64,000 nucleotides of DNA, taken from the IMG/VR virus record IMGVR_UViG_3300020442_000005, positions 62,001 through 126,000 of that record. One strand, given 5' to 3'. Under the pieces are notes generated by a model. That model ran no database searches. It was not told the DNA's origin and worked only from the letters and a program-made list of their open reading frames with translations. Shown piece by piece: positions 10,495 to 60,526 of this stretch; positions within the stretch are counted from its first letter, which is position 1; every line of letters starts with the position of its first letter. Position numbers and translations under genes: made by a program.

Positions 10495-10808
10495 TGGAAT
10501 ATATTCCATGGGTTATCTGCGCTTTATTGACGGTACTTTTGTCTGTTTCTGTTTATTATAATTTAAAGTTTGCCAAAATTATTTTAAAAATGGAGGATGA
10601 AATAGGTACCTGTCTAGACATAATCGATGAAAAATACCGTTCATTGTCACAGGTACTAGAAATTCCAATTTTTTTTGACTCACCACAAGTAAGAAAAGTT
10701 ATTGACGATATCAAGGCTGCACGAGGTTCGTTGCTAAATATAGCTAATAAGTTGACAAGTATAGATCAGGAGGTAATCGCTGATGCCAAAAGTGAAGAAA
10801 GTAATTAA
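10491..10808 (+). CDS. Hypothetical membrane-anchored protein
   Basis: Hydrophobic N-terminal helix (IPWVICALLTVLLSVSVYY) followed by a helical segment. Confidence 0.6.
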   Translation: MMEYIPWVICALLTVLLSVSVYYNLKFAKIILKMEDEIGTCLDIIDEKYRSLSQVLEIPIFFDSPQVRKVIDDIKAARGSLLNIANKLTSIDQEVIADAKSEESN

Positions 10809-11523
10809 AAGAAAAATTAAAAGGCCACCTTCTGGTAAAAAACCGTACTTTACAAAAGATACCCAACAAGCAATAAAAGAGTACGTACAAAGCGACGACC
10901 AATCGTTTCGTGAGCAAGTATATACAAAAGATATCCGACCAGCTCTAGAAAAGCTTTCAGAAAACCTGATTTTTGTTTATGGCTTTCATAAGCAGCATCC
11001 AGATATCGATACCTTGAAACACAATTGCGTGATCAACCTATATGAAAATTTACATAAATTTGATCATGATAGAAATAAAAACGCATTCTCGTATTTTAAC
11101 GTTGTTGCAAAAAACTGGTTGATAATACAAAGTAGAAAAAGAAAGAAGCGTACAGACAGATTGGTGTATATAGAGGATGACTCGTTGTCAATAGCTGATC
11201 GATACGCAATTGAAGAGTATAGCATTTGTCCATCCCCGGAAAAATCCATGGTTATTGAAGAAAATATTCATGACATGAAAAGCCTTCTTTTGGAAATTAA
11301 AAACAAAGCAAAAAACGATCAGGAAAAACGATGTATTGATGCAATAATACAAATTTATGATAATGTTGATCAACTTGACTATTTAAATAAAAGGGCACTA
11401 TTTGTTTATATAAGAGAACTTTCTGGATTGACCTCAAAGCAGCTGTCTGTTTGTATGTCGAATCTTAGAAAAATCTATAGAAATCTAGCCGGTCCTGATA
11501 AGAAATACGATATTTTTATGTGA
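10783..11523 (+). CDS. Phage late-transcription sigma factor (T4 gp55-like)
   Basis: KPYFT...AIKEY, and KFDHDRNKNAFSYFNVVAKN resembling the gp55/sigma region-2 FD...N.F.YF motif. Lies directly before the structural module. Confidence 0.7.
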   Translation: MPKVKKVIKRKIKRPPSGKKPYFTKDTQQAIKEYVQSDDQSFREQVYTKDIRPALEKLSENLIFVYGFHKQHPDIDTLKHNCVINLYENLHKFDHDRNKNAFSYFNVVAKNWLIIQSRKRKKRTDRLVYIEDDSLSIADRYAIEEYSICPSPEKSMVIEENIHDMKSLLLEIKNKAKNDQEKRCIDAIIQIYDNVDQLDYLNKRALFVYIRELSGLTSKQLSVCMSNLRKIYRNLAGPDKKYDIFM

Positions 11524-11528
11524 GGTGC

Positions 11529-11888
11529 ATGATGGCAAAAAAAGATCCATTGAGTTATGAAGACGTACAGAAAAAAGTTCAAGACTTTGATGAATTAATA
11601 AACAGTATTGAAAACATTGAATCAAAAAAGAAGCAATTGTGGAAGGAAATATATGAGAATGCGTTTGTAGACCGCATGAACGCGTATATGCTTTTTACAG
11701 ATTGCTTTACAGGCCTTTCTGGATCTACCGCTGACCACGTTCAGGTTGGTGGACAGCTAGCAAAATATATCGAGAGAATGAATAAGGCAAATGATCAGCT
11801 TATTAAACTAGCAGAAATGATATCAAAGGAAGAAGAGCGCGCAAACTCGGTTTCATCCGATGACTTGTTTAACGAAATAGGCGGATAA
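11529..11888 (+). CDS. Hypothetical helical protein
   Basis: GAGGTG SD, coupled to both neighbours. No catalytic motif recognised. Confidence 0.6.
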   Translation: MMAKKDPLSYEDVQKKVQDFDELINSIENIESKKKQLWKEIYENAFVDRMNAYMLFTDCFTGLSGSTADHVQVGGQLAKYIERMNKANDQLIKLAEMISKEEERANSVSSDDLFNEIGG

Positions 11889-11889
11889 C

Positions 11890-13488
11890 ATGGGCATAAG
11901 AGATCCAAATAGTGGCTTTCTTGGCGGTTTGCTTGGGCGCGGCAATGCGCCTTTCTTTGAAATATATGTGCAAGAAGTGCTAACAGATCCAAGTAGATAT
12001 GAGTTTGCCGGCGAAGACGAAGAAAAGCCAGAGAGTAATCTTCTGTTTGGCAACTCCATCCCGCAAGCCGCAATAACAGACGCGCCATATAACTCGATTA
12101 TTGGTCGGGTTGTTAGAGGTCACGACGTCCGAGAAGAAGTTATTGCTTATCCGATGATGCAAGGTCACATGATGCTACCGGTTAAAGCCGGCGAACATGT
12201 TTGGGGAATGATTAACAACGGTCGTTATTATTGGCTTTGTCGCAAAAATTTTGATAGCCAAGTCGATGACGTTAATCTTGCTTGGGGCGGAAGATTTAAA
12301 TCTGCAACAAACGCAAAAAGAACATCTGAGTCTGCCAACGCTGCAGAGGGCGGCGAGGATGCTAGTACACTGCCATCAAACCAGCACCCAAGAATCAACG
12401 CTGTCTTTCCTCCCGTGGCCGAAGACCCGGGTGAGATCGATATGCAAACGTACTGGGCGGAAAGATCAAAAGGGATATACGAGGCAGTTCCAAGATATAA
12501 AAAAAGACCTGGAGATCTGGTCCTTCAAGGTTCCAACAATACGTTGATTTGCCTAGGGACGGGCGGAGGACATACTAAAGAAGCCGAGTTAACTCTTGAA
12601 ACTACATCAATAAGCGAACTTGAGGTGACTGAAGACAGTCTCGGATCCGGAACAATTGATCTAGTTACAGGCCGCGGCCGATATGCTCCGGCAAAGGCTA
12701 CCACTGATGCATCCTCGTTAGGTGATACTCCAGAACGTACGTCAGCTGCCACGATTGTGTCGGAGTTTGGCTATACTGAGGTCGATAAAAACCCAGAAAT
12801 TAACGACATTACAGAAAAAAACCTTATTGAAGGTGATCCAGATTTTGGTTTTGATGCAAGTAGAATATACATAAGCTCAAAAAGTGATATTGATTCAGAT
12901 TTTACGCTGATACCAAATTATCCGCCGATTCCTGCGGTGCAAACCGAGGGTGATGTTGGAGTTGTACCAGAAACTTCGAACGGTAGCGCCATTGCACTTA
13001 AGTCTGACAATATAAGACTAATAGCTAGACAACATATTGCAAGTGATTTTTTCGAAACTACAACAGCTGAGGATGTGCAGGGTTCTATACGTATTGTGAA
13101 GGAAGGAATACGTGATAGCGACGGACATTCTTCCACCAATGATGACGGCGCAAGTTTAATCGCTCTAGAAAGCGATGGTACGGTTATGATTGATGGTGCA
13201 ATGATAGTTATTGGCACTGGCCGAGAAGAAAGTAATGGAGCCGGAGATCAAGTATACATCGGTGCCGGTGCTACAGAACCGCTGGTGTTGGGTAATCAAA
13301 TGAAGCAATTGCTGTCAGACTTTTTTACAGAGTTAAGTTCTTGGCTTTCTACAAAGTTTGATACCCATATTCACCCAACCGGCACTGGTCCATCAGGTCC
13401 TCCAACCGTTACCGGGAATGACGCCGGAACTGGCGCTGCAAAGGATGCTTTGGATAGCACCTTATCAAAAGTAGGGAAGACAAAATAA
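11890..13488 (+). CDS. Baseplate central spike/hub protein (gp5/gpV/gp138-like)
   Basis: N-terminal OB-like segment (YPM...LPVKAGEHVW), PGDLVLQGSNN, beta-repeat region, and C-terminal FDTHIHPTGTGPSGPP (HxH metal-binding apex). Confidence 0.7.
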   Translation: MGIRDPNSGFLGGLLGRGNAPFFEIYVQEVLTDPSRYEFAGEDEEKPESNLLFGNSIPQAAITDAPYNSIIGRVVRGHDVREEVIAYPMMQGHMMLPVKAGEHVWGMINNGRYYWLCRKNFDSQVDDVNLAWGGRFKSATNAKRTSESANAAEGGEDASTLPSNQHPRINAVFPPVAEDPGEIDMQTYWAERSKGIYEAVPRYKKRPGDLVLQGSNNTLICLGTGGGHTKEAELTLETTSISELEVTEDSLGSGTIDLVTGRGRYAPAKATTDASSLGDTPERTSAATIVSEFGYTEVDKNPEINDITEKNLIEGDPDFGFDASRIYISSKSDIDSDFTLIPNYPPIPAVQTEGDVGVVPETSNGSAIALKSDNIRLIARQHIASDFFETTTAEDVQGSIRIVKEGIRDSDGHSSTNDDGASLIALESDGTVMIDGAMIVIGTGREESNGAGDQVYIGAGATEPLVLGNQMKQLLSDFFTELSSWLSTKFDTHIHPTGTGPSGPPTVTGNDAGTGAAKDALDSTLSKVGKTK

Positions 13489-14052
13489 ATGGCACTAAGT
13501 TTATCTGAGCTAGAAAGCGATCTGTTAGATGGTTTTAACGCAGGTCTTGATGGCGCTTCGGTTAGAGAGGCCGCGCAGTATTTTGCTTTTGCAATCATTG
13601 CATATGCGTCTTCTGCCGAAGTTGTTATCGCTCCCGGGCCCATCCTTATCCCTGGAGCTCCACCAGTACCATCCTCAGCTAACGGACAGAAAGTAAGCGT
13701 GCAAACGTATGAGACGGGAAAAAACCTGCTTTGGGACGCGATAGAGGCAAACTTCGAAGCGCAGGATAAGACGATGGCCATTGCCGCGGCTGGTATTATT
13801 GCATATGTCTCCGGAGCCTTTACATTGTTTTCTGGCGGCGGAAATACAGTCGCAGGCGCTGCCGTGATGCCACCACCTCTAATACAAGCTCTATCCGGAG
13901 CAATTCCGCCAGGTTTGGCCGGTGGGACAACAGAGGAACAAGCCGCATTGTTTGCAAAAATTATACATGCTGCTTTTAAATCGACTGTTTTTACCGGTGT
14001 CTGTACAGCGGCTGATGGTGGTGTAGGACCAGTTGTTGGCACTTTAATTTAG
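13489..14052 (+). CDS. Putative baseplate/spike-associated structural protein
   Basis: Ala/Gly/Pro-rich, with three A..F/IA..II.Y/A helical repeats. Abuts the spike gene. Confidence 0.5.
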   Translation: MALSLSELESDLLDGFNAGLDGASVREAAQYFAFAIIAYASSAEVVIAPGPILIPGAPPVPSSANGQKVSVQTYETGKNLLWDAIEANFEAQDKTMAIAAAGIIAYVSGAFTLFSGGGNTVAGAAVMPPPLIQALSGAIPPGLAGGTTEEQAALFAKIIHAAFKSTVFTGVCTAADGGVGPVVGTLI

Positions 14053-14087: not shown

Positions 14088-14095
14088 ATAATTAT
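14088..14095 (+). promoter_or_regulatory. Candidate late promoter ATAATTAT
   Basis: Copy of the recurrent ATAHTTAW motif, 16 nt before the ATG, with GAGGAG SD in between. Confidence 0.55.
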
Positions 14096-14111
14096 TGCGA
14101 GGAGACATAAT

Positions 14112-14648
14112 ATGACCGCAAAAAATTATTCAACTAATAAATCAAGCACGACAAGCTTTAAGTCAGCCGGGCAATTAATTGCCGATTACAACGATAGAGT
14201 TGAAAATAAGATTGTTGTCGAGCGAAAACCTATAGGAATTAAAACTCCTCTCCAGTTAAAAAAGGGCAATCTATTTGATATGACCTATAATCTATCAGAT
14301 CAAATAACTGATAATCTTCGCAATTTAATTATGACAAACAAAGGCGAGAGATTAGGAAACCCGAATTTTGGCACTGACTTAAGAAAAACGCAGTACAACA
14401 CTGCAAACAAAGAGGATGCCGAAATTGAAATGATGGCAAAAATTCAAAACGCTGTTAAAATATTTTTGCCATTTGTTGAATTGGTGGATTTCACAACTAC
14501 TGAACTTCCACCATCGATGGTTACATCTACAGCAGATCTGCATTCTGGATTTGCCGGTGGAGCATTATCGGTAAAAATAACTTATACAGTGCCGCAAATA
14601 TCAAACGTTGAAAAAGGCTTGACAGTATTATTGCCTATGGGAGTTTAA
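14112..14648 (+). CDS. Baseplate wedge subunit, gp25/gpW-like
   Basis: DQITDNLRNLIMTNKGERLGNPNFGTDLR is the gp25 signature. Confidence 0.88.
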   Translation: MTAKNYSTNKSSTTSFKSAGQLIADYNDRVENKIVVERKPIGIKTPLQLKKGNLFDMTYNLSDQITDNLRNLIMTNKGERLGNPNFGTDLRKTQYNTANKEDAEIEMMAKIQNAVKIFLPFVELVDFTTTELPPSMVTSTADLHSGFAGGALSVKITYTVPQISNVEKGLTVLLPMGV

Positions 14649-14649
14649 A

Positions 14650-16464
14650 ATGCCAGAAAATAAAGATCGTAAATACTTAGCAAAAGATTTTGTCGGTTTA
14701 AGAAACGAACTGTTAAATCATGCAAAAATATATTTTCCAAATAATATACAGGATTTTTCCGAAGCATCTCTTGGCGGTTTACTTTTAGAAATGGCTGCAT
14801 ATGTCGGTGATAATATGTCATATTATCTAGATCATCAGTTCAATGAGCTAAATTATGAAACAGCAGTCGAGGCTGAAAATATAGAAAATCATCTTAGAAA
14901 TGCTGGCGTTAAAATAATCGGTGCTAGTCCGGCTACAATGGTCGTAAAATTCTACATTGAAGTACCATCAGAATTAATTAACGGAGACTACGGACCACAG
15001 CCAAAAAGTTTGCCAATAATCAAAAAAGGAACTACTGTTGCAACGGAGACAGGGATTAATTTTGAGCTTAGTCATGACATTGATTTTGCCGCCAAAGATG
15101 AATTTGGTGAATATGTTGCAACTATAGTATCTTCAAACAGACGCGGCGGTATCCCAGAATCATTTTTCATGTATTCTCCTGGGCTATGTACCTCTGGGCA
15201 AACAACAACAGAAACGTTTGCAATCCCAAACACAGATAAGCCTTTTCGTACAATTTCACTTCAGAATTCTTCAATTTCATCGATAGATAGAGTTTATGAT
15301 ACTGCCGGCAACGATTATTATGAAGTCGAAAGCTTGAGCCAAGATACTGTATTTAAAGCGGTAAATAACGATAACTTTGCCAACGACGGTGTTTTTTATA
15401 ACATGCAGGTTATATCTGCATCAAGACGTTTCATAACTGAAACTTCTTTACTTACAAGATCTACTAGTATAAAATTTGGATCTGGTTCTCCGTCATCGCT
15501 CGATACCGACATTATTCCAGATCCATCAGAATTAGCGTTACCTCTTTTTGGCCGGCGCAATGTTAAGAAATTTAGCATAGACCCAAACAGTATATTACAG
15601 TCAAAAACGCTTGGTGTTTATCCCAAGAATACAACAATCTTTGTTTCGTATAGATACGGAGGCGGATCGTCACATAACGTTCCAGCAAACAGTGCGAACG
15701 GAGTTTCCTCGCTGTCGATTGAATTTGATCCAAGCATCAGTGGAGCCGCAAGGACTCGGGTAATAAACAGCATCGACGTTGTTAACGACGAAGCCGCTTC
15801 TGGTGGTTCTGATTCTCCTGGAATCGAAGAGCTTAGGGCTTTAATTCCAGCATCGCGTAACATGCAAAACCGGATCGTTACAAAGCAAGATCTGTTGGCA
15901 CGTCTATTTACTTTACCAGCTGAGTTTGGTCGAATATTTAGAGCAAGTATTATTGCTAACCCGAACAACCCACTTGCTAGCATGCTACACGTAATATCAC
16001 GAAATAAAGAAGGAAAACTTACACAGGCTCCAGATGCCCTTAAGCAAAACATTTCTACTTACTTGAATGAGTTTAGACTGATTTCTAACGCAATCGATAT
16101 ACTGGATGCAGAAATAATTAATTTTAAGGTTACTGTTAACGTGGTAGTTACGGCCGGGACAAATCCCACAGATGTTGCTAATTCGATAATAATTAATTTA
16201 AAAGAACATTTCAATATAAACAATTTTCAACTTGGCCAAAATCTTAACGAAGCAAAAGTCATAAGTGTTATTTTAAACACTCCAGGAGTACAAGCTATGG
16301 ACAGCTTGTTATTCGGTAACATATCAGGAAACATAAATGATAGAAATTATTCTGGATACACTTATAGCTTTAGCAACAATAGAATTAATGGTAGTTACGC
16401 CATCCCAGCAAACGCTATTTTCGAGCTACGCTATCCTGAACAAGATATAACGGTGAACGTATAA
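14650..16464 (+). CDS. Baseplate wedge subunit, T4 gp6/gpJ-like
   Basis: YLAKDF..LRNELL, DFSEASLGGLLLEMAAYVGD..SYYLD, IKFGSG, SGGSD..GIEELR, QNRIVTKQD. Confidence 0.88.
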   Translation: MPENKDRKYLAKDFVGLRNELLNHAKIYFPNNIQDFSEASLGGLLLEMAAYVGDNMSYYLDHQFNELNYETAVEAENIENHLRNAGVKIIGASPATMVVKFYIEVPSELINGDYGPQPKSLPIIKKGTTVATETGINFELSHDIDFAAKDEFGEYVATIVSSNRRGGIPESFFMYSPGLCTSGQTTTETFAIPNTDKPFRTISLQNSSISSIDRVYDTAGNDYYEVESLSQDTVFKAVNNDNFANDGVFYNMQVISASRRFITETSLLTRSTSIKFGSGSPSSLDTDIIPDPSELALPLFGRRNVKKFSIDPNSILQSKTLGVYPKNTTIFVSYRYGGGSSHNVPANSANGVSSLSIEFDPSISGAARTRVINSIDVVNDEAASGGSDSPGIEELRALIPASRNMQNRIVTKQDLLARLFTLPAEFGRIFRASIIANPNNPLASMLHVISRNKEGKLTQAPDALKQNISTYLNEFRLISNAIDILDAEIINFKVTVNVVVTAGTNPTDVANSIIINLKEHFNINNFQLGQNLNEAKVISVILNTPGVQAMDSLLFGNISGNINDRNYSGYTYSFSNNRINGSYAIPANAIFELRYPEQDITVNV

Positions 16465-25700: not shown

Positions 25701-26643
25701 TACGCAGGGAGAAACCGGAGCTCTAAGAATAAATAATCGTCTGGTCGACAATAACGAACGCCAATATGATTCTATAATGCCAGATTTCGCTTTTATAACG
25801 AATATCGATGACGCGCACTTCGGACAGCTGGCCTCAGAAAAACTTGCAACGCTAGGGCTTCTGAAGTTTGGAAATATCTCAGCTGGCGCAAACGCACACT
25901 GGTTTTATTCCTATCCCTTTGAGGGTAGATACGCCGGTGCAGCAAGAACTCACACAATAACTAAGCCGGATGGCTCAACGCAGGCTTCATATAGAATGGA
26001 ATTTGCGGATACTGCAGCCGGAACAAACTTTATTAGTTTTTCAAATACCGGAACTATTCTTACTGGATCTACAGGATTCTCACCAAGAAACACAGTGGAA
26101 TCGTTAGCAGTAAACAACCAAGGAACATTAAATCAGTTTATTGAAGCTGGGGACGTTATACGCGTTCTTTTTGCTGCTGGTGATTTATCACGAGGTAGAT
26201 TTTTTGCAATCGGAGCAGACTCAGACGGTGATCGTGTTGGTGTTAACAGCGCTAACTCAGGTGCTACAATTAATTTTGGTGGATATAAATACGGAGTATC
26301 CAATTCTAGACCAGCGTTTAGCTCAGCAGTCTATAGTAGAAGCGCATACGGACAACTTCGTGATATGCTGGAACCGAGAAAATTTACAGCATATTTTAAG
26401 GATGGAGTAGTGAGCTTTCCAGTTGAGCAGAGATTTTTCACACGAAACAATCAACCTTTAAACGAGTCGCAGAGAATAAACACGACATGTTCAAATTTAT
26501 CGACGAATGCAACATCATCATTGCCATTTTTCGATCGAGAAAATAATGAATCAGCAAGAAACAGAGACGCTGGTTCAACAGTGACTCAAGTAAATATATC
26601 ACCTAATTTTGCACCAGCGCAAGGGCCATTTACAGGTTTATGA
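22744..26643 (+). CDS. Large virion protein with an N-terminal LamG-like domain
   Basis: IVFSGWIY...KWVHFAIAID...RIFING...LNGALADLALF. Ser/Thr/Gly-rich. Confidence 0.6.
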   Translation: MGVYSRKLQKYNLLKDFRVSNGTTWKLSRSLVFWLRANSSTNLLVDQSNNLSPIASTGTGHLDTTKGPLARFNFNGLNFNTKYITVSNGEAEDVTNEKSIVFSGWIYLNVSPGLNNQGFSILQTDAVNGFNIFVDDQGRLGIRLTNYSDSTHDGGGSALASSTIKTDMGVVFERKWVHFAIAIDKSVATQTIFAANATKPRIFINGHEEGTTHTDVGSPSLLDPKTAAGSYRIGYGPAKDETVAKIYLNGALADLALFQPDVDLTDAQLASLYYAALNGAYLLGSGFISTSPFNVLNDAMHRDTHPTVARHSNDRRQGNHNIHFDDSRAIHLTNSAATSFPTMLSEENPLFNTVYNGIENGQLTSTAVSASFGIFDEYYEENNAVTIEPFIESKIYLNSGSSYYSTGTLESEIPGFNQPLRNKEIISIELQNEADIILGSYGDSEIIVDNGQVNQPSYMAYWDNGNSLFRSLPGNTITVVNAAEFNTSALRASGTMRNHTGSCIGFASPLQILSGTGQIPYSSDDYSGITITKFPENYYKTFGNPIDYYGFPDDRRYESRDGESINMSNYISKPFLLEKIAFEFSELKINPCSNHQAGTHGTTFTMGINMPVGGSPQRHAILEATRGIELLTCFLMREFPSKVSTSTESQWHVPLHSIRPISTSSFFSGDTNRDLVTYSQALFYNTSNDNTIKSFFARNLSSLYQVTSSAPGLTDFNNQSGYDDIANLIQELMPFEYKENLGQEASSDGSFAHVGDAGAVTRNDLVIESVPKIIRPTTFGGQITGNAAHVETTSAGTLTLSYSGQATNKSEIATNRNYSTGLAGLSNPENAFLIVGAGNVGEHISVEISESEENTSPQILLPSDKLIFGLQTLPRISERFAGTSGVNILAGSRVKITLFGSYIRNEKRSSNGYGQNLGTHTVHESIGSDAVSDQFITAYIGEYSGSFSDDVISGSIDPTTVYEGHDHVTGEIIKLARRVGGRATQGTQGETGALRINNRLVDNNERQYDSIMPDFAFITNIDDAHFGQLASEKLATLGLLKFGNISAGANAHWFYSYPFEGRYAGAARTHTITKPDGSTQASYRMEFADTAAGTNFISFSNTGTILTGSTGFSPRNTVESLAVNNQGTLNQFIEAGDVIRVLFAAGDLSRGRFFAIGADSDGDRVGVNSANSGATINFGGYKYGVSNSRPAFSSAVYSRSAYGQLRDMLEPRKFTAYFKDGVVSFPVEQRFFTRNNQPLNESQRINTTCSNLSTNATSSLPFFDRENNESARNRDAGSTVTQVNISPNFAPAQGPFTGL

Positions 26644-26650
26644 TAATTAT
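26643..26650 (+). promoter_or_regulatory. Candidate late promoter ATAATTAT
   Basis: Motif copy 21 nt upstream of the giant fibre ATG. Confidence 0.5.
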
Positions 26651-26671
26651 AAGCGTTAACCGGTAGAGTTT

Positions 26672-33941: not shown

Positions 33942-34078
33942 CGATCGTTTTAGCAAATTAAAACTATTAAAAATATTGATATATTACGGTAGTTCAGTAT
34001 GAATAAGAACTATTTTAATTATTGAAAATTTATCGCTTTTAATAATGTAGACTTGGTGGGTTAAATATTTTTGATGGC

Positions 34079-34086
34079 ATAATTAT
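34079..34086 (+). promoter_or_regulatory. Candidate late promoter ATAATTAT (overlaps TATAAT)
   Basis: Motif copy at the end of a long AT-rich intergenic region. Confidence 0.5.
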
Positions 34087-34113
34087 AATCGTGGATACCA
34101 AATGGAGTTAAGA

Positions 34114-34332
34114 ATGAAGTATCAAACATCCGATTTATCAATCGCTGCATTTTTGATGATGAAAGGCCTAAAGCTTGTTTCTGCAGACCGAGAATCATCT
34201 GGGCGGTTCATGTTCGTGTTTGATGATCCAAATAACGAAGGCGTAAAATACGCTATAGAATTTGCAGGGTCAGACTGTGCAGTTTATGATAACCACGTGC
34301 GGAATCTTAAAAAAATATTGTACAGAAATTAA
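34114..34332 (+). CDS. Small protein, DUF5659-like
   Basis: YQTSDLSIAAFLMMKG.KL...FMFVF pattern. ATG at 34114 after GGAG (track start 34102). Confidence 0.6.
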   Translation: MKYQTSDLSIAAFLMMKGLKLVSADRESSGRFMFVFDDPNNEGVKYAIEFAGSDCAVYDNHVRNLKKILYRN

Positions 34333-34365: not shown

Positions 34366-34373
34366 ATACTTAT
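34366..34373 (+). promoter_or_regulatory. Candidate late promoter ATACTTAT
   Basis: Variant motif about 100 nt upstream of the 34476 gene. Confidence 0.35.
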
Positions 34374-34475
34374 AGTAAAGAAATTTAGGTAAGTAGCGTT
34401 CGTTAAGTTCAGATATATTCTCTTATTGTTGTAGAAGAGTAAAAAACAAACAATTGTATAAATGGAGAAATACAA

Positions 34476-36272: not shown

Positions 36273-36295
36273 ATCTATTTATTAGATTTATATAT

Positions 36296-36810: not shown

Positions 36811-36818
36811 ATAATTAA
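36811..36818 (+). promoter_or_regulatory. Candidate late promoter ATAATTAA
   Basis: Motif copy 22 nt before the ATG, followed by AAGGAG. Confidence 0.5.
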
Positions 36819-36840
36819 TAAAAGGAGAAGTTAAAAAGTT

Positions 36841-37761: not shown

Positions 37762-37764
37762 AAT

Positions 37765-45614: not shown

Positions 45615-47326
45615 GCAGCTTACCATCCAAACCGGTAATGATATTTTCTACGCAACAGCCGAGCTTTTTGTCGGCTAAATTTGTGTATAATTATTACGAA
45701 AGAGACGAGTTTATAAACGAAGTCGACATAAGGGATCCCGATAAATTAGAGTTCCCTCCGCGTTTAATTGAACTTAATTTTTCTAAAGTAGAAAGTATTG
45801 TAGCATCAAATAACTTTGGCCAAAAATTTAACTCACATATCAACGAAATTATCACTCAAAAAGACAAGATCACAAGCGAACTTCTTTTGCAGTCTGCCGG
45901 GTTTGTAAAATATACTAGCGATACAGAAAGAGATTATTCTTTTTACCATACCTCTGATCTTGGATCCTCAGAAAACAAAAGCAAAATATCTGCATTTTTT
46001 GAAAATGCTTCAACAGCAGACGGTCAGCAGTTTGCAGACACGCCTGAAAACATGGGAATCTATTTAAATCTGACAACAAACAGGCCGACTTCAAAGTCCG
46101 CAGATATTTTTTCCCAACGCGCGAATGAAACGCTGATAGCATCTGACATATGCTTTGATTTGGTTGAAGCTTCGGCAGCAAATCCATTTTCCATACATAG
46201 TAAAAAAAATCATAACGACTTAAGGAATTTAAGAAATTTGCAGGTACGTACTCGGAGAAGAACTAATCCTGCATTAGTAAGCGTTGACGAATATGTGATG
46301 AGCGTTGATGGTTTAGATTTTGAGAACAGCGCCGATCTTTTTGCTGAGTTTGATAACACTGCCGGCATGGGAATCATTGGCTACATACTTTTTAAGAGTG
46401 AGATTGATGAGCTTGGAAACGTTATAGCGGAACTTGGATCATTCATAATTAAAGATCTGCAATCATCTTCAATCACTGATCCAAAGATTAAATATGGGGC
46501 GAGATATAAATACAATCTCCACCCGTTGTATATTGTAAAGCCAGATCCCAACGAAAGATTTTCTTTTGCAATGATTGGCGCTAGAGGAAAGTCTGTTAAA
46601 ATACGATGCGTAGAAAACGTGCCACCTCCACCTATAGAAGCAATTAAATTCTCTTATATGGGTGATGGAAACGTTAATCTAAGATGGACTAGTCCTATAC
46701 AATATGGAAACATCCCAACCCGGCCTATAGGCGATATCAAAGGATACCAGATATTTGTACGCGAAGATTATAATGCGCCTTTTAAGTTAAAAAAATATCT
46801 GACATTTAATGATATGATTGGATTAGAAAACTTTCCATTGCAAGAAAATATTCCAGAAAAATACATATCTAGATCTACAAACCACGTGACAGACTACACA
46901 ATTAACATAGAAAGAGACAGAAACTACATTGTGGCAATGTGTGCTATTGATGCGCACGGAAATTCATCAAACCTTTCGCCGCAGTATATTGTAAGACTTG
47001 ATTCAACCACTAATACAATAACGGTTGATTTTGCATCATATAAAGGCGCACCGAAACAGTATCCAAACATGTTAATGTCTGACAAAATATTTATTGATTG
47101 TATAAAGGTTTCCGGAAAAAATAAGATGACTGTAGTTTTTGACCCGGAACTCACACATGTAAATTTATCAGAAAACAACAACGATAAAGTCGACGTTGTT
47201 GCCCAGCAGCTTGAAGCCCTGCCGGCATACCGAATACAGCTTATTAACGTCACAAAACAATCAGATAAGATCGTAGATATCTTCCTAAAGAGGCAGCAGC
47301 AGAATCTTATTAATTTTGGCTCATAA
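45611..47326 (+). CDS. Virion protein with Fn3-like domains
   Basis: DPKIKYGARYKY; PPPPIEAIKF...LRWTSP...IKGYQIFVR; YIVAMCAIDAHGNSSNLS. Confidence 0.55.
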   Translation: MSSLPSKPVMIFSTQQPSFLSAKFVYNYYERDEFINEVDIRDPDKLEFPPRLIELNFSKVESIVASNNFGQKFNSHINEIITQKDKITSELLLQSAGFVKYTSDTERDYSFYHTSDLGSSENKSKISAFFENASTADGQQFADTPENMGIYLNLTTNRPTSKSADIFSQRANETLIASDICFDLVEASAANPFSIHSKKNHNDLRNLRNLQVRTRRRTNPALVSVDEYVMSVDGLDFENSADLFAEFDNTAGMGIIGYILFKSEIDELGNVIAELGSFIIKDLQSSSITDPKIKYGARYKYNLHPLYIVKPDPNERFSFAMIGARGKSVKIRCVENVPPPPIEAIKFSYMGDGNVNLRWTSPIQYGNIPTRPIGDIKGYQIFVREDYNAPFKLKKYLTFNDMIGLENFPLQENIPEKYISRSTNHVTDYTINIERDRNYIVAMCAIDAHGNSSNLSPQYIVRLDSTTNTITVDFASYKGAPKQYPNMLMSDKIFIDCIKVSGKNKMTVVFDPELTHVNLSENNNDKVDVVAQQLEALPAYRIQLINVTKQSDKIVDIFLKRQQQNLINFGS

Positions 47327-47377
47327 TTATAAAGGATATGAATTCAAATTAATTTTAACGTAAACTCAAGAAAAGAT

Positions 47378-47385
47378 ATAATTAA
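47378..47385 (+). promoter_or_regulatory. Candidate late promoter ATAATTAA (second copy ATAATTAT at 47323-47330)
   Basis: Motif copy 19 nt before the ATG, with AAGGAG SD. Confidence 0.5.
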
Positions 47386-47404
47386 TCTTGTTAAGGAGAA
47401 AAAA

Positions 47405-52179: not shown

Positions 52180-52727
52180 TGATACTTGGACTTGATGTTT
52201 CTACTGCAACGATCGGATATACGGTGCTCGACAACGACGGCTTTGTTTTAGAAATGGACTTTATATCTCTTAAGAAAATAAAAGGCATAACAAACAAAGG
52301 TTTTCATTTTCGAAAAGTATTGAGAGAGATTTGCAAAAGGCACAGTATCAAGGAAGTCTTTATAGAGGAGTACTTTCAAAGATTTGCTCGAGGCATGTCC
52401 TCTGCGCGTACTATCACGCTTTTATCATCGTTTAACGGGATAGTTCAGTACATATGTCATGATGAGTTAGGAATAGCGCCAGAACCAATTGCTGTGAACA
52501 CGTGTAGAAGTTTAGTAGGCATAAAAACACTCTCGAAAAAGAAGGCTGGAAAGGACGTTAAAGAACAGGTTTTTGATTGGGTGTCGAATCACCTACAATA
52601 TAAGTGGCCAACTAAGATTTTACAATCAGGCCCTAGAAAAGGCCAGCTTATAATATTGGAAGAAGCCAGAGATATGGCAGATGCATGGGTTGTAGCAAAG
52701 GCGGGATTTGTAAAAGCGTCAACATAG
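52179..52727 (+). CDS. RuvC-like Holliday junction resolvase
   Basis: MILGLDVSTATIGY, VFIEE, DMADAWVVA (RNase H-fold acidic residues). Confidence 0.85.
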   Translation: MILGLDVSTATIGYTVLDNDGFVLEMDFISLKKIKGITNKGFHFRKVLREICKRHSIKEVFIEEYFQRFARGMSSARTITLLSSFNGIVQYICHDELGIAPEPIAVNTCRSLVGIKTLSKKKAGKDVKEQVFDWVSNHLQYKWPTKILQSGPRKGQLIILEEARDMADAWVVAKAGFVKAST

Positions 52728-52736
52728 GGATATAAT
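52708..52736 (+). promoter_or_regulatory. Sigma70-like early promoter TTGTAA-N17-TATAAT
   Basis: TTGTAA 52708-52713 and TATAAT 52731-52736, with ATG at 52743. Same hexamers and spacing as at 55095. Confidence 0.7.
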
Positions 52737-53686: not shown

Positions 53687-53694
53687 ATAATTAT
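53687..53694 (+). promoter_or_regulatory. Candidate late promoter ATAATTAT
   Basis: Motif copy 22 nt before the first ORF of the small-gene cassette. Confidence 0.5.
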
Positions 53695-53716
53695 GAGTGT
53701 AACTAGGAGTCAATGA

Positions 53717-55068: not shown

Positions 55069-55089
55069 GTCAGGCTAAGCCTGGCTTTT
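55069..55089 (+). terminator. Probable intrinsic terminator closing the small-gene cassette
   Basis: GTCAGGC-TAA-GCCTGGC stem (one G-U pair) followed by TTTT. Confidence 0.55.
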
Positions 55090-55094
55090 ATATA

Positions 55095-55123
55095 TTGTAA
55101 ATTACTTCATAATAGACTATAAT
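55095..55123 (+). promoter_or_regulatory. Sigma70-like early promoter TTGTAA-N17-TATAAT
   Basis: TTGTAA 55095-55100 and TATAAT 55118-55123, intergenic. Confidence 0.7.
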
Positions 55124-55149
55124 ATATAAAATACTGTTTGGAGTTTATA

Positions 55150-58100: not shown

Positions 58101-58284
58101 AGATGAGGGTTTTGGCGCACTAGACCATCAGAATGTAGAAGCTGTAACTTCATTAATGAAAAGACTTAAGGCTTATTACAGACTAATCATGGTTATTTCG
58201 CATGTTGACGTTGTAAAAGATTCAGTTGATAATATTATCGATATAACAAAAGTTGGCATGGAATCAAAAGTGGAATATGTCTGA
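55150..58284 (+). CDS. Fused Mre11/SbcD nuclease - Rad50/SbcC ATPase (T4 gp47-gp46-like)
   Basis: Phosphoesterase motifs DVH, GD, GNHD and GDIH, then Walker A GRNRCGKS, coiled coil, ASGME signature, Walker B FIVDEGFGALD and ISH. ATG at 55150 after GGAG. Confidence 0.92.
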   Translation: MRIAHIADVHWRGYQRHVEYRTSFSDMFRQLRELKVDAICVAGDIVHSKTQGISPELIDNLNWWFTELSRIAPTHVILGNHDGLILNKDRQDAISPILNALNLQNVYLYKKSGVYNDPNDDRFNWCAFSPFDEEGYAEVKPQRGKINIAMYHGAVWGSHTDMDFMLDGDCKMDFFRGFDYVMLGDIHKRQQLDKDGRIWYPGSPIQQNYGESGDKGFLLWDIESDSEFDVEFFPIRHDNPFVTVDWQGNIQSTISKCMKEWPAGARFRIRSTVELDPKTQRKLATVLRREHGADEVVYQLKLKQSSISKETSEKIKIQDLSDPLTHKKLLREWSDDDGLTDPEFWSEVDRIVDETVPKLKVSADHKGNLWSIKEMNFDNTFGYGKDNVINFSKLSGIVGLFGRNRCGKSSIPGTIMYALYNSNDRGIASIQHVINTRRSNCSADVTFSVNGRLYRLERHSVRYPARGGKNEGAMSYLSLYEVDDEGRIIKDLSGEQRRDTEKSLRNLIGTPEDFMMTSFAAQGNMNSFIKQGPTERKKTISNFMGLDVYDQFQSIVKEESAGVKNMLKRLSEKDWVALIRSNRTDITNFKEQRTHLAEKINDLNDRYREFSEKAQEESGGDFVDPSQLARKRRLLENKKSGLSDIRYHISTLQERLSTEQENLVVLETFRDNFPLESYNRRLELLEGLRRNLQKMQMNLKQERTVMANQKKSVSLLKEVPCGDSFPTCKFIAESHKNKALLKEQKELVSNLKSELDEAKIKLEQIEEEGLRQKIEEYNDNLKKIQNTKMSIVVSKSKLEKENRDLADALQDIQRLSDEITDMELRSDEEKSVVLANLKSKLKAIDSEVKEYKLDMFSLAQKIGECQANIKQLEKESVEFDRLQVEWKVYDYLLKATSWRGIPAYIMKKQLPIINSEMSKILQDTSGFTVELDITDKKTDIFINYGDSRRPIECASGMEKMVSSMALRVALGNVSNLNKSDMFIVDEGFGALDHQNVEAVTSLMKRLKAYYRLIMVISHVDVVKDSVDNIIDITKVGMESKVEYV

Positions 58285-58555
58285 TAGCATCATATATGAA
58301 GAAAAAAATGGGTTAATAATAATAAAGCCGGCTAATTATATTTGTGATGAAAAGGATTGCAAGATTTGTGGATTTGCCTTGAGAGACATGCAAGACGTGC
58401 AGGAGCATGATCGGCATGGATGTTGTACAGATTGTTCTTTATATTTCAGACAACCAAATATAAAAAAATGGGAGAATGGTTGGCGTCCCAGCAGAAATGA
58501 AATCGATAGCATAATTAACAATAGAGATATAGGAGACTCAAATGTTAAACAGTAA
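58277..58555 (+). CDS. Small Cys-rich (Zn-finger-like) protein
   Basis: CKIC...CCTDC...W..GWRP. Start overlaps the upstream gene end (track start 58253). Confidence 0.65.
   Translation: MSDSIIYEEKNGLIIIKPANYICDEKDCKICGFALRDMQDVQEHDRHGCCTDCSLYFRQPNIKKWENGWRPSRNEIDSIINNRDIGDSNVKQ
58511..58518 (+). promoter_or_regulatory. Candidate late promoter ATAATTAA for the packaging genes
   Basis: Motif copy 23 nt before ATG 58542, followed by AGGAG. Confidence 0.45.
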
Positions 58556-58937
58556 ACAACTCAGTGTATTAGAAAACATTTTCGAAGCAACGTTCGGAAA
58601 AGGCTCAATGAACGATAAGGGACACGCACTTCGTCATAAGACTATGGTTGATCCAAGTGATGGTGAACTTATTTTAGAGTTGCGTCTTGAAAGAGGAATT
58701 AATTTTTCGCCTAACGACGGACTAACAAAACAAAAATTAGATTTAGATAAAGATGCTTTCAAAGCAATTGGCAATAAAATCGCTGACGCAAAGAAAGAGT
58801 TTAGAGAGCTAGCTGAATCTAGTTTAAAAGTAAAGCAGTTGGGCAAAGAAAAATCTGATATTGTGCCATATCAATTCAATAGAGCTTTGGTAAGAGCAAG
58901 ATATGTTGCGACCGTGGCATATAAGATTGGTGTCTAA
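58542..58937 (+). CDS. Hypothetical protein upstream of terminase
   Basis: AGGAG SD; stop overlaps the terminase start. Confidence 0.6.
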   Translation: MLNSKQLSVLENIFEATFGKGSMNDKGHALRHKTMVDPSDGELILELRLERGINFSPNDGLTKQKLDLDKDAFKAIGNKIADAKKEFRELAESSLKVKQLGKEKSDIVPYQFNRALVRARYVATVAYKIGV

Positions 58938-60514
58938 TGCCAGCTACGCAGAAACAACGGCAAATCAAAGAAATAATTAGGTGCGGAAAGAATCCAACAT
59001 ATTTTTTTAACAAGTATGTTAAGATTCAGCACCCTATAAAGGGAGCAATTCCATTCAAGACTTTTGATTTCCAAGACACATGCGTTGAGGCTTTTGAAGA
59101 ACATCGATTCAACATTGTTCTTAAAAGCCGACAGCTCGGTTTGTCAACTATTTCTGCTGCATATGCTGCATGGCTAGCAATATTTCACAAGGACAAGAAT
59201 ATCCTTGTTATCGCGACTAAATTATCTGTTGCACAAAACTTTATACGCAAAGTAAAGTTTGTAATTAATTCAATGCCAAAATGGTTATTGATACCACAGA
59301 TTGTGAATAACAATAAACAGGCTCTAGAATTTTCAAATGGTTCGACCATTAAAGCTGTGCCAACATCAGAAGATGCAGGTAGATCTGAGGCGCTTACATT
59401 ATTGATAGTTGACGAGGCTGCTTTTGTAAGAAACTTTGATACTTTGTGGACCGGTCTGTATCCAACCCTATCGACTGGTGGTCGGGCCATAGTGTTATCA
59501 ACCCCCAATGGTGTCGGCGGACAGTATTACGATTTGTGGAAACAGGCTGAAGACGGAGAAAACGTTTTTAATCCAATCAAACTGACATGGGACGTTCACC
59601 CAGATAGGGATGACGCTTGGTTCGCAGAAGAAACTAAGAACATGTCAAAAAAACAGATTGCACAAGAATTGATGTGTGATTTTCAGGCATCAGGCGATAC
59701 TTTTTTGCAAGTCGAGGATATCGATTACATTAGAGGTTGGATTCGACCTCCCATCGAAAAGTGGGGCCCGGACATGGGAGTATGGGTATGGGACTATCCT
59801 CTTTCTACAAAAAAATATATTATTAGCGCTGACGTAGCAAGAGGCGACGGCAACGACTATTCAACTTTTCATGTGTTCGATACAGAAGCATCATCGGTAG
59901 TAGCTGAATATAGGGGTAAGTTGCCACCTGATAAGTTTGCTCAAGTACTTGCGGAAGCTGGTCGACGATACAATGATGCACTACTTTGCCCGGAAAACAA
60001 TTCATACGGTTATGCCGTAGTTATGAAACTAGTCGAAATGGATTATAGAAATCTCTACTTCCAAAACGAAAAGGATAGATACTCCCATATGTACGGTACA
60101 CAGGACGTTGGAAAGATAGGGTTTCAAACTAATGTTAAGACCAGATCACAGATTCTAACAAAGCTGGAAGAGGTACTCCGAACAAAGCAATTGTCTGTAA
60201 AATCTGCGCGGCTGTATGACGAATTAAAAACGTTCGTTTGGAAAAATGGAAAAGTTCAGGCTCAAAAGGGACAGAACGATGATTTGATTATGGCATTGGC
60301 AATTGGTGTTTGGTTGTATGATACGACACCGCAACTTTCAAAGACTGGCACAGACATAAATAAAGCTATGTTGGCAGCGTTTGGTACATCAAACACATCA
60401 ATGTCAAACACAGTAATGAACACATCACCAAACAGTACTGTGGATTCTAGAGGCAACAGGATAATTACTAACAACAATAATGAGTATACTAATTTTGATT
60501 GGCTTATAAAATAG
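58937..60514 (+). CDS. terL: Terminase large subunit (T4 gp17-like)
   Basis: LKSRQLGLST (Walker A), LIVDEAAF (Walker B), LSTPNG, nuclease ADVARGDGNDYS, NDDLIMALAI. Confidence 0.96.
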   Translation: MPATQKQRQIKEIIRCGKNPTYFFNKYVKIQHPIKGAIPFKTFDFQDTCVEAFEEHRFNIVLKSRQLGLSTISAAYAAWLAIFHKDKNILVIATKLSVAQNFIRKVKFVINSMPKWLLIPQIVNNNKQALEFSNGSTIKAVPTSEDAGRSEALTLLIVDEAAFVRNFDTLWTGLYPTLSTGGRAIVLSTPNGVGGQYYDLWKQAEDGENVFNPIKLTWDVHPDRDDAWFAEETKNMSKKQIAQELMCDFQASGDTFLQVEDIDYIRGWIRPPIEKWGPDMGVWVWDYPLSTKKYIISADVARGDGNDYSTFHVFDTEASSVVAEYRGKLPPDKFAQVLAEAGRRYNDALLCPENNSYGYAVVMKLVEMDYRNLYFQNEKDRYSHMYGTQDVGKIGFQTNVKTRSQILTKLEEVLRTKQLSVKSARLYDELKTFVWKNGKVQAQKGQNDDLIMALAIGVWLYDTTPQLSKTGTDINKAMLAAFGTSNTSMSNTVMNTSPNSTVDSRGNRIITNNNNEYTNFDWLIK

Positions 60515-60518
60515 TCAT

Positions 60519-60526
60519 ATATTTAT
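60519..60526 (+). promoter_or_regulatory. Candidate late promoter ATATTTAT
   Basis: Motif variant 18 nt before the portal ATG. Confidence 0.5.

What the first reader, a model, noticed from the sequence alone, without database searches (positions are those of the whole stretch)
10783..60526. Candidate late promoter ATAHTTAW paired with a divergent gp55-like sigma factor
Seen: ATA(A/C/T)TTA(T/A) at 14088, 26643, 34079, 36811, 47378, 53687, 58511 and 60519, each 16-27 nt before a start codon, with extra copies at 34366 and 47323. It occupies most of the larger gaps before structural and packaging genes. It differs from the T4 late promoter TATAAATA. Inference: this is the cognate element of the sigma factor at 10783. 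Caveat: the motif is AT-rich.
Basis: partly seen in the sequence, partly recalled or inferred. Interest (0 to 1): 0.62.

Follow-up and report, generated by a model that had tools for sequence, protein, structure and literature searches.

The report
Late-gene promoter motif and phage sigma
A short DNA word (consensus gcATAATTATA) sits just upstream of the tail, baseplate and packaging genes of a 273-kb marine phage and its relatives; it is most likely the late-gene promoter, read by a phage sigma factor that resembles T4 gp55 but keeps an extra sigma region-4-like domain.

Summary
All ten listed sites exist. In the window's gaps the word occurs 9 times, against 1.9±1.4 in dinucleotide shuffles. 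Genome-wide (273 kb), 38 of 114 plus-strand sites lie 18-50 nt before a start, a zone that is 3.7% of the genome. Reverse-complement words of the same composition are not enriched (4/76 against 24/78). The refined consensus is gcATA(A/c/t)TTAtA, with no -35 element. The element is kept upstream of the baseplate gene in 37 of 42 distinct relatives. It is again the top word in an independent 289-kb relative. It also precedes late genes in a cultured Flavobacterium phage and a cultured Microcystis phage.

Genes of known function behind it are mostly structural or packaging genes. Replication and recombination genes instead carry a bipartite TTGTAA/GTGTAA-N17-TAtAAT promoter.

ORF 10783 is a real but divergent sigma. 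Its N-terminal half matches T4 gp55, including the helix-loop-helix. Its C-terminal 95 residues fold like sigma region 4, which gp55 lacks.

The pairing of motif and sigma is plausible but unproven. A second, canonical sigma70-like gene elsewhere in the genome is a rival reader. I file this as a new variant of a known kind.

The parts
10783..11523 (+). Divergent sigma factor, 246 aa. Residues 21-148 form a sigma region-2-like domain plus a helix-loop-helix, as in T4 gp55. Residues 150-236 form a four-helix region-4-like domain. The conserved C-terminal tail is KKYDIFM.
   Evidence: PHROG 234 'late sigma' E 2.5e-3. Pfam Sigma70_r2 hit weakly by 18 of 25 family members. Model pLDDT 78. Best structural match is T4 gp55 7d7c_F, Z 11.3 over residues 21-148. 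The C-terminal domain alone has sigma region 4 as 8 of its 9 top matches among 48,161 chains, Z 5.3-6.4.
14088..14096 (+). Class A site GC-ATAATTATT, 24 nt before the ATG of the gp25-like baseplate wedge gene.
   Evidence: The same element is kept at the same place in 37 of 42 distinct relatives.
14112..16464 (+). gp25-like baseplate wedge gene (14112-14648) and gp6-like baseplate wedge gene (14650-16464), the first genes of the baseplate and tail-fibre block.
   Evidence: Pfam GPW_gp25, PHROG 261 and PHROG 219.
26643..26651 (+). Class A site ATAATTATA overlapping the stop codon of the 1299-aa gene, 29 nt before the ATG of the 1846-aa gene.
34079..34087 (+). Class A site GC-ATAATTATA, the best-scoring site in the genome (15.3 bits), 23 nt before ATG 34102.
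34366..34374 (+). Class A variant TC-ATACTTATA, 110 nt before ATG 34476.
   Evidence: ATACTTAT counts are 14-15 on the + strand and 5 on the - strand genome-wide.
36277..36284 (+). Family-level variant CTATTTAT in the 31-nt gap before 36304.
   Evidence: The same word precedes late genes in the Flavobacterium phage immuto.
36811..36819 (+). Class A site GT-ATAATTAAT, 30 nt before ATG 36841.
47323..47331 (+). Class A site TC-ATAATTATA overlapping the stop codon of 45611-47326 (score 14.2).
47378..47386 (+). Class A site AT-ATAATTAAT, 27 nt before ATG 47405.
53687..53695 (+). Class A site TA-ATAATTATG, 30 nt before ATG 53717.
58511..58519 (+). Class A site GC-ATAATTAAC, 31 nt before the 131-aa gene that precedes the large terminase (presumed small terminase).
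   Evidence: ATA[AG]TTA[ATG] is kept upstream of this gene in all 5 relatives recovered.
58937..62572 (+). Large terminase (58937-60514) and portal (60545-62572).
   Evidence: PHROG 2 E 2e-53 and PHROG 213 E 4.5e-72.
60519..60527 (+). Class A variant AT-ATATTTATA in the 30-nt gap between terminase and portal, 26 nt before the ATG.
   Evidence: Relatives that have a gap here keep ATAnTTAn; many others have no gap at all.
52708..52736 (+). Contrasting bipartite promoter TTGTAA-N17-TATAAT before the DNA primase gene.
55069..55123 (+). Terminator hairpin (55069-85) followed by TTGTAA-N17-TATAAT before the Mre11-like/Rad50-like fusion gene.
7195..7201 (+). TATAATA element in the last gap upstream of the tightly packed block 7223-14052, which contains the sigma gene. 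It is the likely source of sigma transcription.
   Evidence: No class A site lies between 7175 and 14052.

Best explanation
The window is part of a 273-kb marine myovirus. Its virion module is T4-like, it has no RNA polymerase of its own that I could see, and nearly all genes are on one strand.

Its genes carry two promoter architectures. Replication and recombination genes, the block containing ORF 10783, and a second sigma gene sit behind sigma70-style promoters ([T/G]TGTAA-N16-18-TA(t/a)A(a/t)T, or TATAAT alone). These are presumably read early by the host holoenzyme. Baseplate, tail-fibre, sheath, tube, neck, terminase and portal genes sit behind a single 9-11 bp element, gcATA(A/c/t)TTAtA, 20-45 nt before the start codon and with no -35 partner.

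I propose that this single element is the late promoter and is recognised as a -10-type element by the product of ORF 10783. The sigma is made from an earlier promoter and replaces the host sigma on host core RNA polymerase. Its gp55-like region 2 plus helix-loop-helix melts and reads the element. Its region-4-like C-terminal domain holds the beta-flap, the job gp33 does in T4, without a sequence-specific -35 contact.

Shown: the motif's existence, its direction, position and conservation, the split by gene class, and the fold of the protein. Inferred: that the motif is a promoter, that it is late, and that this sigma reads it.
For: - Enrichment over AT-matched shuffles and over reverse-complement words.
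- An unbiased k-mer screen puts ATAATTA first in this genome (28 of 72 in the upstream zone) and in an independent 289-kb relative whose sigma is 59% identical (20 of 66; full motif 36 of 137, p 2e-18).
- No information at -35 in 37 aligned sites. G/C is preferred just upstream, and a purine (33 of 37) lies 12 nt after the first A.
- Footprint: TAnTTA is kept 12-38 nt before the gp25 ATG in 37 of 42 distinct relatives, against 20% of shuffles. It is also kept before the small terminase and portal genes.
- Several sites directly follow terminators.
- Downstream genes: gp25, gp6, terminase, portal, neck, sheath, tube, tape-measure-like. Primase, Mre11-Rad50, 5'-3' exonuclease, an AAA ATPase and sigma-2 carry the bipartite type instead.
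- The element precedes late genes in phages of three different host groups that all encode a 10783 homologue. These are Flavobacterium phage immuto, which has no canonical sigma gene, Microcystis phage Mel-JY01, and the marine clade. That points to a phage-borne reader rather than host sigmas of differing specificity.
- The sigma gene lies 2-4 kb upstream of the gp25-like gene in all 58 loci recovered.
- Fold: gp55 is the top hit, Z 11.3 through the helix-loop-helix (PMC7892883).
- hhalign lines up LH(N/K)FD and KNxxxY, so gp55 F86 and Y97 correspond to invariant F93 and Y104.
- Precedent: phiEco32 gp36 reads a single element tAATGTAtA (PMC8948821).
Against: - No transcript 5' ends or timing data exist; no RNA run could be listed.
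- The motif also precedes non-structural genes. A 14-bit copy at genome 41532 lies 146 nt upstream of the first gene called after it, ahead of the 41.6-76 kb gene block, which has few internal sites and includes the sigma gene. So 'late only' is not established.
- The protein has a region-4-like domain. That normally implies a -35 element, and the bipartite class shares the AATTATA core with class A. So this sigma might read that class instead, or both.
- Sequence similarity to gp55 is marginal, and Z scores for gp55 and for ECF region 2 are tied.
- Gene starts come from my own simple ORF caller.
Confidence: 0.5

Rival explanations
1. The element is a promoter, but it is read by the second phage sigma (the canonical sigma70-like gene at genome 206827-207528), not by ORF 10783. 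That gene ends within region 4.1, so its product could favour -10-only promoters. ORF 10783, with regions 2 and 4, would then read the bipartite GTGTAA-N17-TAAATT class.
For: Sigma-2 has regions 1.2, 2 and 3 at Pfam significance and stops within region 4. It is conserved in two large relatives. ORF 10783 has a region-4-like domain that could contact a -35 box. The bipartite class has a clear upstream box.
Against: Phage immuto (complete genome) has no Sigma70_r2 gene, yet keeps a 10783 homologue and the TAnTTAT element before its late genes. Sigma-2 itself sits behind a bipartite promoter, like the early or middle genes. A region 2 that close to sigma70 would be expected to prefer TATAAT, not ATAhTTA.
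Confidence: 0.17
2. The element is a weak -10 box, (C/T)ATAAT, read by the host primary sigma, perhaps helped by a phage activator. ORF 10783 does something else.
For: The word contains ATAAT, and 11 of 37 sites read TATAAT. One site (47355-47382) has a -35-like TTAACG at 16 nt. AT-rich -10-like words are expected in gaps.
Against: There is no -35 information and no TGn extension. In every register the invariant TT or the first A clashes with the A-11 or T-7 of TATAAT. A whole subclade uses CCTAATTAC. The same core precedes late genes in phages of Flavobacterium, Microcystis and an SD-using marine host, whose primary sigmas differ. In immuto the host-type early promoters (GTTG-N21-TATATTTAG) are clearly distinct. 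Sigma70-type consensus matches as a whole are not enriched (72 against 62±6.6).
Confidence: 0.13
3. The element is not a promoter. It is a binding site for a dimeric regulator (ATAATTAT is a perfect palindrome), or it is a leader RNA element that affects translation or stability.
For: The commonest form is palindromic (36 copies). In immuto an ATAATTAA word sits inside the transcribed leader of early genes, downstream of their promoter. Here the word lies close to the ribosome-binding site.
Against: The flanks are asymmetric: GCATAATTA occurs 11 times on + and 2 on -, with G/C before and A after. The non-palindromic variants ATACTTAT and ATATTTAT are strand-specific and equally well placed. 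Distance to the ATG varies from 21 to 66 nt, with a separate GGAG in between. Several sites follow terminators, where a new transcript must start.
Confidence: 0.08

Closest known systems
T4 late transcription: gp55 sigma, gp33 co-activator, gp45 clamp, promoter TATAAATA (PMC7892883, PMC2988020)
   Same: A phage sigma on host core polymerase. A single -10-type AT-rich element with no -35, placed before virion genes. The fold matches through the region-2-like domain and the long H4-H5 helix-loop-helix. gp55 F86 and Y97 have conserved counterparts. The acidic-hydrophobic extreme C-terminus (YDIF, FDIL, DFxLFFG) recalls the clamp-binding LDFL[LYF]. The virion module (gp25, gp6, gp20, gp23-type, sheath, terminase) is T4-like.
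   Different: The element is ATA(A/c/t)TTATA, not TATAAATA, which is unused here. The protein carries a region-4-like domain where T4 uses the separate, structurally unrelated gp33. No gp45-like clamp or DnaN was detected in this contig. The cultured relative immuto is annotated with a family A DNA polymerase and no sliding-clamp or clamp-loader gene in the roughly 148 kb of its 160-kb record that I read. Sequence similarity to gp55 is marginal.
phiEco32 gp36 sigma with single-element middle/late promoter tAATGTAtA (PMC8948821; structure 9m7y)
   Same: A phage-encoded sigma that redirects host polymerase to a single 9-bp AT-rich element with no -35. The words are alike (TAATGTATA against TAATTATA). 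In phiEco32 the start site lies 6-8 nt downstream. 9m7y chain F appears among the structural matches of both the whole model and the C-terminal domain.
   Different: The phage is an unrelated podovirus. According to that paper gp36 lacks recognisable region 4 at sequence level and is aided by gp79. No homology to gp36 was tested or shown here.
ECF (group 4) sigma factors
   Same: A two-domain architecture of region 2 plus region 4 and a length near 200-250 aa. A few database entries of this family are auto-named 'sigma24 family'. Structural matches include sigmaE, sigmaH, sigmaW and sigmaL.
   Different: ECF promoters are bipartite with a dominant -35 (AAC) box, whereas class A has none. No anti-sigma neighbour is evident. 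No Pfam region-4 model is hit, and region 2 is hit only weakly.
Salmonella phage 7-11 gp47 late sigma, promoter GTAAtg-N16-aCTA (PMC8948821)
   Same: A phage late sigma that keeps a region 4. The bipartite class seen here (GTGTAA-N17-TAAATT) resembles that promoter layout.
   Different: That promoter layout corresponds to the rival pairing, not to the class A element. No homology was tested.

Membership tests
T4 gp55-type late sigma | Sigma region-2 homology domain (helices H1-H4) that binds the clamp helices and reads the -10-like element | tested here: met
   Model residues 21-126. VIA-align Z 11.3 to gp55 (7d7c_F) and Z 9-10 at rmsd 2.2-2.9 Å to sigmaE, sigmaS and SigW region 2. Pfam Sigma70_r2 is hit weakly by 18 of 25 members.
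T4 gp55-type late sigma | Extended H4 plus H5 forming a helix-loop-helix beyond region 2 | tested here: met
   The model has H101-126 and H137-146. The gp55 alignment runs to residue 148, while ECF region-2 alignments stop at 126-127. Caveat: the loop at 127-136 has pLDDT 55-62.
T4 gp55-type late sigma | No sigma region 4; flap binding is left to a separate co-activator (gp33) | tested here: not met
   Residues 150-246 folded alone (pLDDT 86.5). In an exhaustive search, 8 of the 9 best matches are sigma region 4, Z 5.3-6.4, rmsd 2.9-3.9 Å over 66-83 residues. Foldseek alone gave nothing significant.
T4 gp55-type late sigma | C-terminal sliding-clamp-binding motif LDFL[LYF] and activation by a phage clamp (gp45) | tested here: inconclusive
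   The tail KKYDIFM (family variants KEFDIL, DDFDIFF, GDFFLFFGE) resembles the motif listed in the paper's Supplementary Table 2. No gp45 or DnaN Pfam hit was found in this 82%-complete contig. The complex test gave no verdict.
T4 gp55-type late sigma | Detectable sequence homology to gp55 | tested here: inconclusive
   PHROG 234 E 2.5e-3 and 2.7e-4. hhalign of the family profile against T4 gp55 gives E 0.017, probability 2.6%, though with a sensible register. A profile search of PDB sequences did not find 7d7c.
T4 gp55-type late sigma | Cognate promoter TATAAATA at -10 with no -35 | tested here: not met
   TATAAATA occurs 13 times and never in the upstream zone. The single-element, no -35 layout itself is met by the new word.
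ECF (group 4) sigma | Only regions 2 and 4 | tested here: met
   The two domains are seen by fold. Between them lies only the helix-loop-helix and a short linker.
ECF (group 4) sigma | Bipartite promoter with a conserved -35 box | tested here: not met
   For class A, no position from -50 to -3 exceeds 0.4 bit in 37 sites. Whether this sigma reads the separate bipartite class is untested.
ECF (group 4) sigma | Co-transcribed anti-sigma factor and autoregulation | not tested
   The neighbouring ORFs 10491-10808 and 11520-11888 have no informative family hits. No class A site lies directly before the sigma gene.
Phage late promoter (functional class) | Transcription starts a few nt downstream, late in infection, and depends on the phage sigma | not testable with these tools
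   No RNA run could be listed, and the host is unknown.

The most novel reading that the evidence does not exclude
ORF 10783 represents a widespread, undescribed family (more than 2,500 metagenomic homologues) of one-piece late sigmas that combine in a single chain what T4 splits between gp55 and gp33. The parts are gp55-type region 2 with the helix-loop-helix, a retained region 4 for the beta-flap, and a C-terminal clamp-binding-like tail. Since no phage clamp is seen, the tail might tether late transcription to the host beta clamp. On this reading the family is an evolutionary intermediate between ordinary two-domain sigmas and the T4 gp55/gp33/gp45 system. Its own promoter word, TAnTTA, would be kept across phages of at least three host groups.
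Probability: 0.2. Interest if true: 0.75.

Novelty: new variant of a known kind. Interest (0 to 1): 0.55.

Why it matters
Most jumbo phages lack their own RNA polymerase and are thought to redirect the host enzyme with phage sigma factors. Few cognate promoters are known for them, and none for this abundant marine lineage or for its cultured relatives (Immutovirus, Mel-JY01).

A validated late-promoter word would allow late genes to be called in hundreds of uncultured genomes in which 70-80% of proteins have no annotation.

The sigma is of interest for how T4-type late transcription evolved. It looks like a gp55 that still has a region 4, which makes testable the question of how gp55 came to lose that domain and hand the flap contact to gp33. 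Immuto is cultured, so the test is practical.

Tried and rejected
- Sequencing runs: a search for RNA runs holding window 33400-38400 listed none. No reads were therefore laid, and the read-mapping limits did not come into play.
- Complex prediction: the sigma tail (residues 196-246) against the E. coli beta clamp returned 'no answer'. It counts neither for nor against binding.
- Clamp and polymerase searches: Pfam gp45-slide_C, DNA_PPF, DNA_pol3_beta and DNA_pol_A found nothing in the own genome. The contig is about 82% complete, so absence is not shown.
- PDB sequence search: the family profile gave only a chance hit.
- Foldseek: the C-terminal domain alone gave nothing significant. Only the exhaustive aligner showed the region-4 enrichment.
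- The over-represented word ATACATAAG looked like a second promoter. It is in fact the shared N-terminal coding sequence of a paralogous gene family, so I rejected it.
- A DNA-level search of the phage collection found no close relative.
- Two registers for aligning the motif to T4's TATAAATA were considered (cATAATTA, 6 of 8 matches; or TAhTTATA, with A-12 and A-8 kept). Neither can be chosen without a mapped start site.
- PHROG and Pfam scans left most window proteins unannotated. The 'late' label therefore rests on the minority of genes with a known function.
- Co-variation between sigma clade and motif variant: the CCTAATTAC subclade could not be tested, because only one promoter per short contig was available.

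Full report
**Setting.** The window is bases 62001-126000 of a single 273,025-bp viral contig (IMG/VR; about 82% complete; 40% GC). With a simple ORF caller of my own, 308 of 341 ORFs lie on the + strand. There is no close DNA relative in the phage collection. By protein, the nearest cultured relatives are Flavobacterium phage vB_FspM_immuto (160 kb) and Microcystis phage Mel-JY01 (190 kb). The terminase is T4-like. Most genes carry a GGAG-type ribosome-binding site. Immuto's genes do not, so the host is probably not a Bacteroidota member.

**The observation.**
- In the window, 9 of 33 + strand sites lie 18-50 nt before a start, a zone that is 2.3% of the window.
- The window's gaps are 72% AT. 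Dinucleotide shuffles of those same gaps give 1.9±1.4 sites against 9 observed, and 0 of 1000 shuffles reach 9.
- Genome-wide, the gaps hold 49 sites against 13.2±3.6.
- Genome-wide, 38 of 114 + strand sites fall in the 3.7% zone.
- As a composition-matched control, non-palindromic forward words are in the zone 24 times out of 78, their reverse complements 4 out of 76.
- An unbiased screen ranks ATAATTA first among 7-mers (28 of 72 in the upstream zone). ATACTTAT is in the zone 10 times out of 15.
- EM refinement gives (g)(c)ATAATTATA in about 38% of 167 upstream regions.
- In 37 aligned sites no position from -50 to -3 carries information. G/C is favoured at -2/-1, A after the core, and a purine (33 of 37, no C) 12 nt after the first A.
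- The T4 word TATAAATA occurs 13 times and never in the zone.

**Conservation.** Fifty-eight viral contigs encode a homologue of ORF 10783, at 36-94% identity. Each also has a gp25-like gene 2-4 kb downstream.
- In 37 of 42 distinct upstream sequences, TAnTTA lies 12-38 nt (mostly 20-25) before the gp25 ATG, against 20% of shuffles. The surrounding gap is otherwise unalignable.
- One subclade uses CCTAATTAC.
- The same word is kept before the presumed small terminase in all 5 relatives recovered. It is kept before the portal wherever a gap exists there.
- In an independent 288,697-bp relative (sigma 59% identical), ATAATTA is again the top 7-mer (20 of 66). The full motif is in the zone 36 times out of 137 (p 2e-18).
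- In immuto, (A/C)TATTTAT(A)A precedes terL, portal, sheath and several virion genes, often right after a terminator. Its many small early genes carry a different, host-type GTTG-N21-TATATTTAG.
- In Mel-JY01, ATATTTATA precedes the portal and other genes of the head block.

**Which genes.** Where a function could be assigned, class A sites precede:
- the gp25-like and gp6-like baseplate genes;
- the terminase pair and the portal;
- a neck adaptor and the sheath;
- the tail tube and a tape-measure-like protein.

They also precede a DHH phosphoesterase, an endonuclease and a hydrolase.

A second architecture, [T/G]TGTAA-N16-18-TA(t/a/c)A(a/t)T, occurs 22 times on + and 10 on -. Seventeen of those + strand copies lie within 80 nt of a start. 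In the window it precedes the primase (52708) and the Mre11/Rad50-like fusion (55095, after a terminator). Elsewhere it precedes an AAA ATPase, a 5'-3' exonuclease and a second sigma gene. About ten copies form a longer cassette with a conserved 5' hairpin, which is also kept in the 289-kb relative.

The sigma gene itself lies in a gap-free block, 7223-14052. The only upstream gap of that block carries TATAATA. This is the layout of a cascade. One caveat: a 14-bit class A copy at genome 41532, after a terminator, lies 146 nt upstream of the first gene called after it, ahead of the 41.6-76 kb gene block.

**The protein.**
- ORF 10783-11523 alone hits no Pfam family. It hits PHROG 234 'late sigma' at E 2.5e-3.
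- It has more than 2,500 homologues in metagenomes, a few auto-named sigma24. Eighteen of 25 of them touch Pfam Sigma70_r2 weakly.
- The AlphaFold model (pLDDT 78) matches sigma factors almost exclusively.
- With VIA-align the top match is T4 gp55 (7d7c_F, Z 11.3, 122 residues, model 21-148). Region-2 fragments of sigmaE, sigmaS and SigW match residues 22-127 at Z 9-10, so these scores are tied. Full-length sigmas span residues 11-243.
- gp55 is defined by region 2 plus a long H4-H5 helix-loop-helix and a C-terminal clamp-binding motif (PMC7892883). The model has the long H4 (101-126) and H5 (137-146).
- hhalign against T4 gp55 is weak (E 0.017) but sensible. LHNFD aligns with LHKFD and KNPHAYIT with KNAFSYFN. 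So gp55 F86 and Y97 (which stacks on the flipped -12 adenine) correspond to invariant F93 and Y104, while H95 and T99 (the -9 and -8 pockets) correspond to F102 and N106. This would fit a promoter that keeps some bases and changes others. The register cannot be fixed, however, and this step is inference.
- Residues 150-246 folded alone (pLDDT 86.5) gave no significant Foldseek hit. In an exhaustive alignment to 48,161 chains, 8 of the 9 best matches are sigma region 4 (sigmaH, sigmaA, sigma28, sigmaE bound to -35 DNA, sigmaL, CnrH, and 9m7y chain F of the phiEco32 gp79-dependent complex), at Z 5.3-6.4.
- The protein is therefore a two-domain sigma with a gp55-like front half, not a canonical gp55.
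- The extreme C-terminus is conserved as an acidic-hydrophobic tail: KKYDIFM here, and KEFDIL, DDFDIFF or GDFFLFFGE in relatives. It resembles the T4 clamp-binding LDFL[LYF]. No clamp gene was found, and the one complex test gave no verdict.

**Pairing.** The TAnTTA element accompanies the 10783 family across phages whose hosts have different primary-sigma specificities. Immuto, a complete genome, has the 10783 homologue but no canonical sigma gene. A single-element promoter read by a phage sigma has precedents in T4 and in phiEco32 (tAATGTAtA, PMC8948821).

Against it:
- The genome also encodes a canonical sigma70-like protein at genome 206827-207528, with regions 1.2, 2 and 3. It is followed by a 90-aa ORF with an HTH-like segment, which may be a split region 4.
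- A region-4-bearing sigma might be expected to use the bipartite class.
- No transcript data were obtainable.

My estimates are about 0.85 that the element is a functional promoter-type signal, about 0.65 that it is the late class, and about 0.5 for the full statement including the pairing.

**Novelty.** It is already accepted that RNAP-less jumbo phages carry sigma homologues that presumably read phage-specific promoters (PMC13282480). I found no description of this family, its promoter word or its domain make-up. I file it as a new variant of a known kind.

Noticed in passing
genome 206827-207820 (locus L013:10827-11820), outside the window: A second, canonical sigma70-family gene (regions 1.2, 2 and 3) that ends inside region 4.1. 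After a 19-nt gap holding ATAATTAAA comes a 90-aa ORF with an HTH-like 'GYREIAEKM...ATARNYFIRAMKKI'. This may be a split region 4. Homologues exist in two large relatives but not in phage immuto.
   Followed up: partly
genome 21473, 22049, 182100, 214490, 226462, 245179, 246224, 247402 (loci L006, L012-L015): A repeated promoter cassette, aaaaaCCGTGTAA-N17-TAAATTATAtATGTAAGGAGAAACCTTGCAGG, with a conserved hairpin at the presumed 5' end of the transcript. It is conserved in the 289-kb relative as CTGTGTAG-N17-TACATTATATATGTAAGA.
   Followed up: partly
window 55150-58284: A single 1044-aa ORF that joins an Mre11/SbcD-like phosphoesterase to a Rad50/SbcC/SMC-like ATPase. These are separate genes (47 and 46) in T4.
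   Followed up: no
genome 9008-9366 (L005) and 227147-228417 (L014:13147-14417): A phage-encoded tmRNA (tag ANNNDNFEVALAA) and a cluster of six tRNAs (Leu, Arg, Gln, Thr, Gly, Met).
   Followed up: no
window 11500-11520 (last residues of ORF 10783) and homologues in L018-L075: The conserved extreme C-terminal tail of the sigma family (KKYDIFM, KEFDIL, DDFDIFF, GDFFLFFGE) resembles clamp-binding motifs. No clamp gene was found.
   Followed up: partly
genome 138675-142022 and 142043-145741 (L009, L010): Two adjacent tail-sheath paralogues of 1115 and 1232 aa. Only the C-terminal third of each matches sheath families.
   Followed up: no
genome 253-263 kb (L016): About ten tandem paralogous genes share an N-terminus (MKNLRQYIRK...). 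This makes the word ATACATAAG look over-represented: 14 copies on + and 1 on -.
   Followed up: partly
window 1-10494 and genome 51.8-62 kb: A long block of glycosyltransferases and nucleotide-sugar epimerases, a radical-SAM/B12-binding protein (window 1116-3128) and PhoH. The block has almost no internal promoter-like sites, and an epimerase and glycosyltransferases are also annotated upstream of the sigma gene in phage immuto.
   Followed up: no
genome 205120-206709 (L013:9120-10709): A phage-encoded GroEL, directly upstream of the second sigma gene. Immuto also has GroES and GroEL.
   Followed up: no
locus L156 (NC_055915.1 58-78 kb): Some twenty small early genes of phage immuto each carry a near-identical promoter and leader, aGTTGc-N~19-tATATTTAGgtatcaATAATTAAaac. 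In that phage the word ATAATTAA is part of a transcribed leader, not a promoter.
   Followed up: partly
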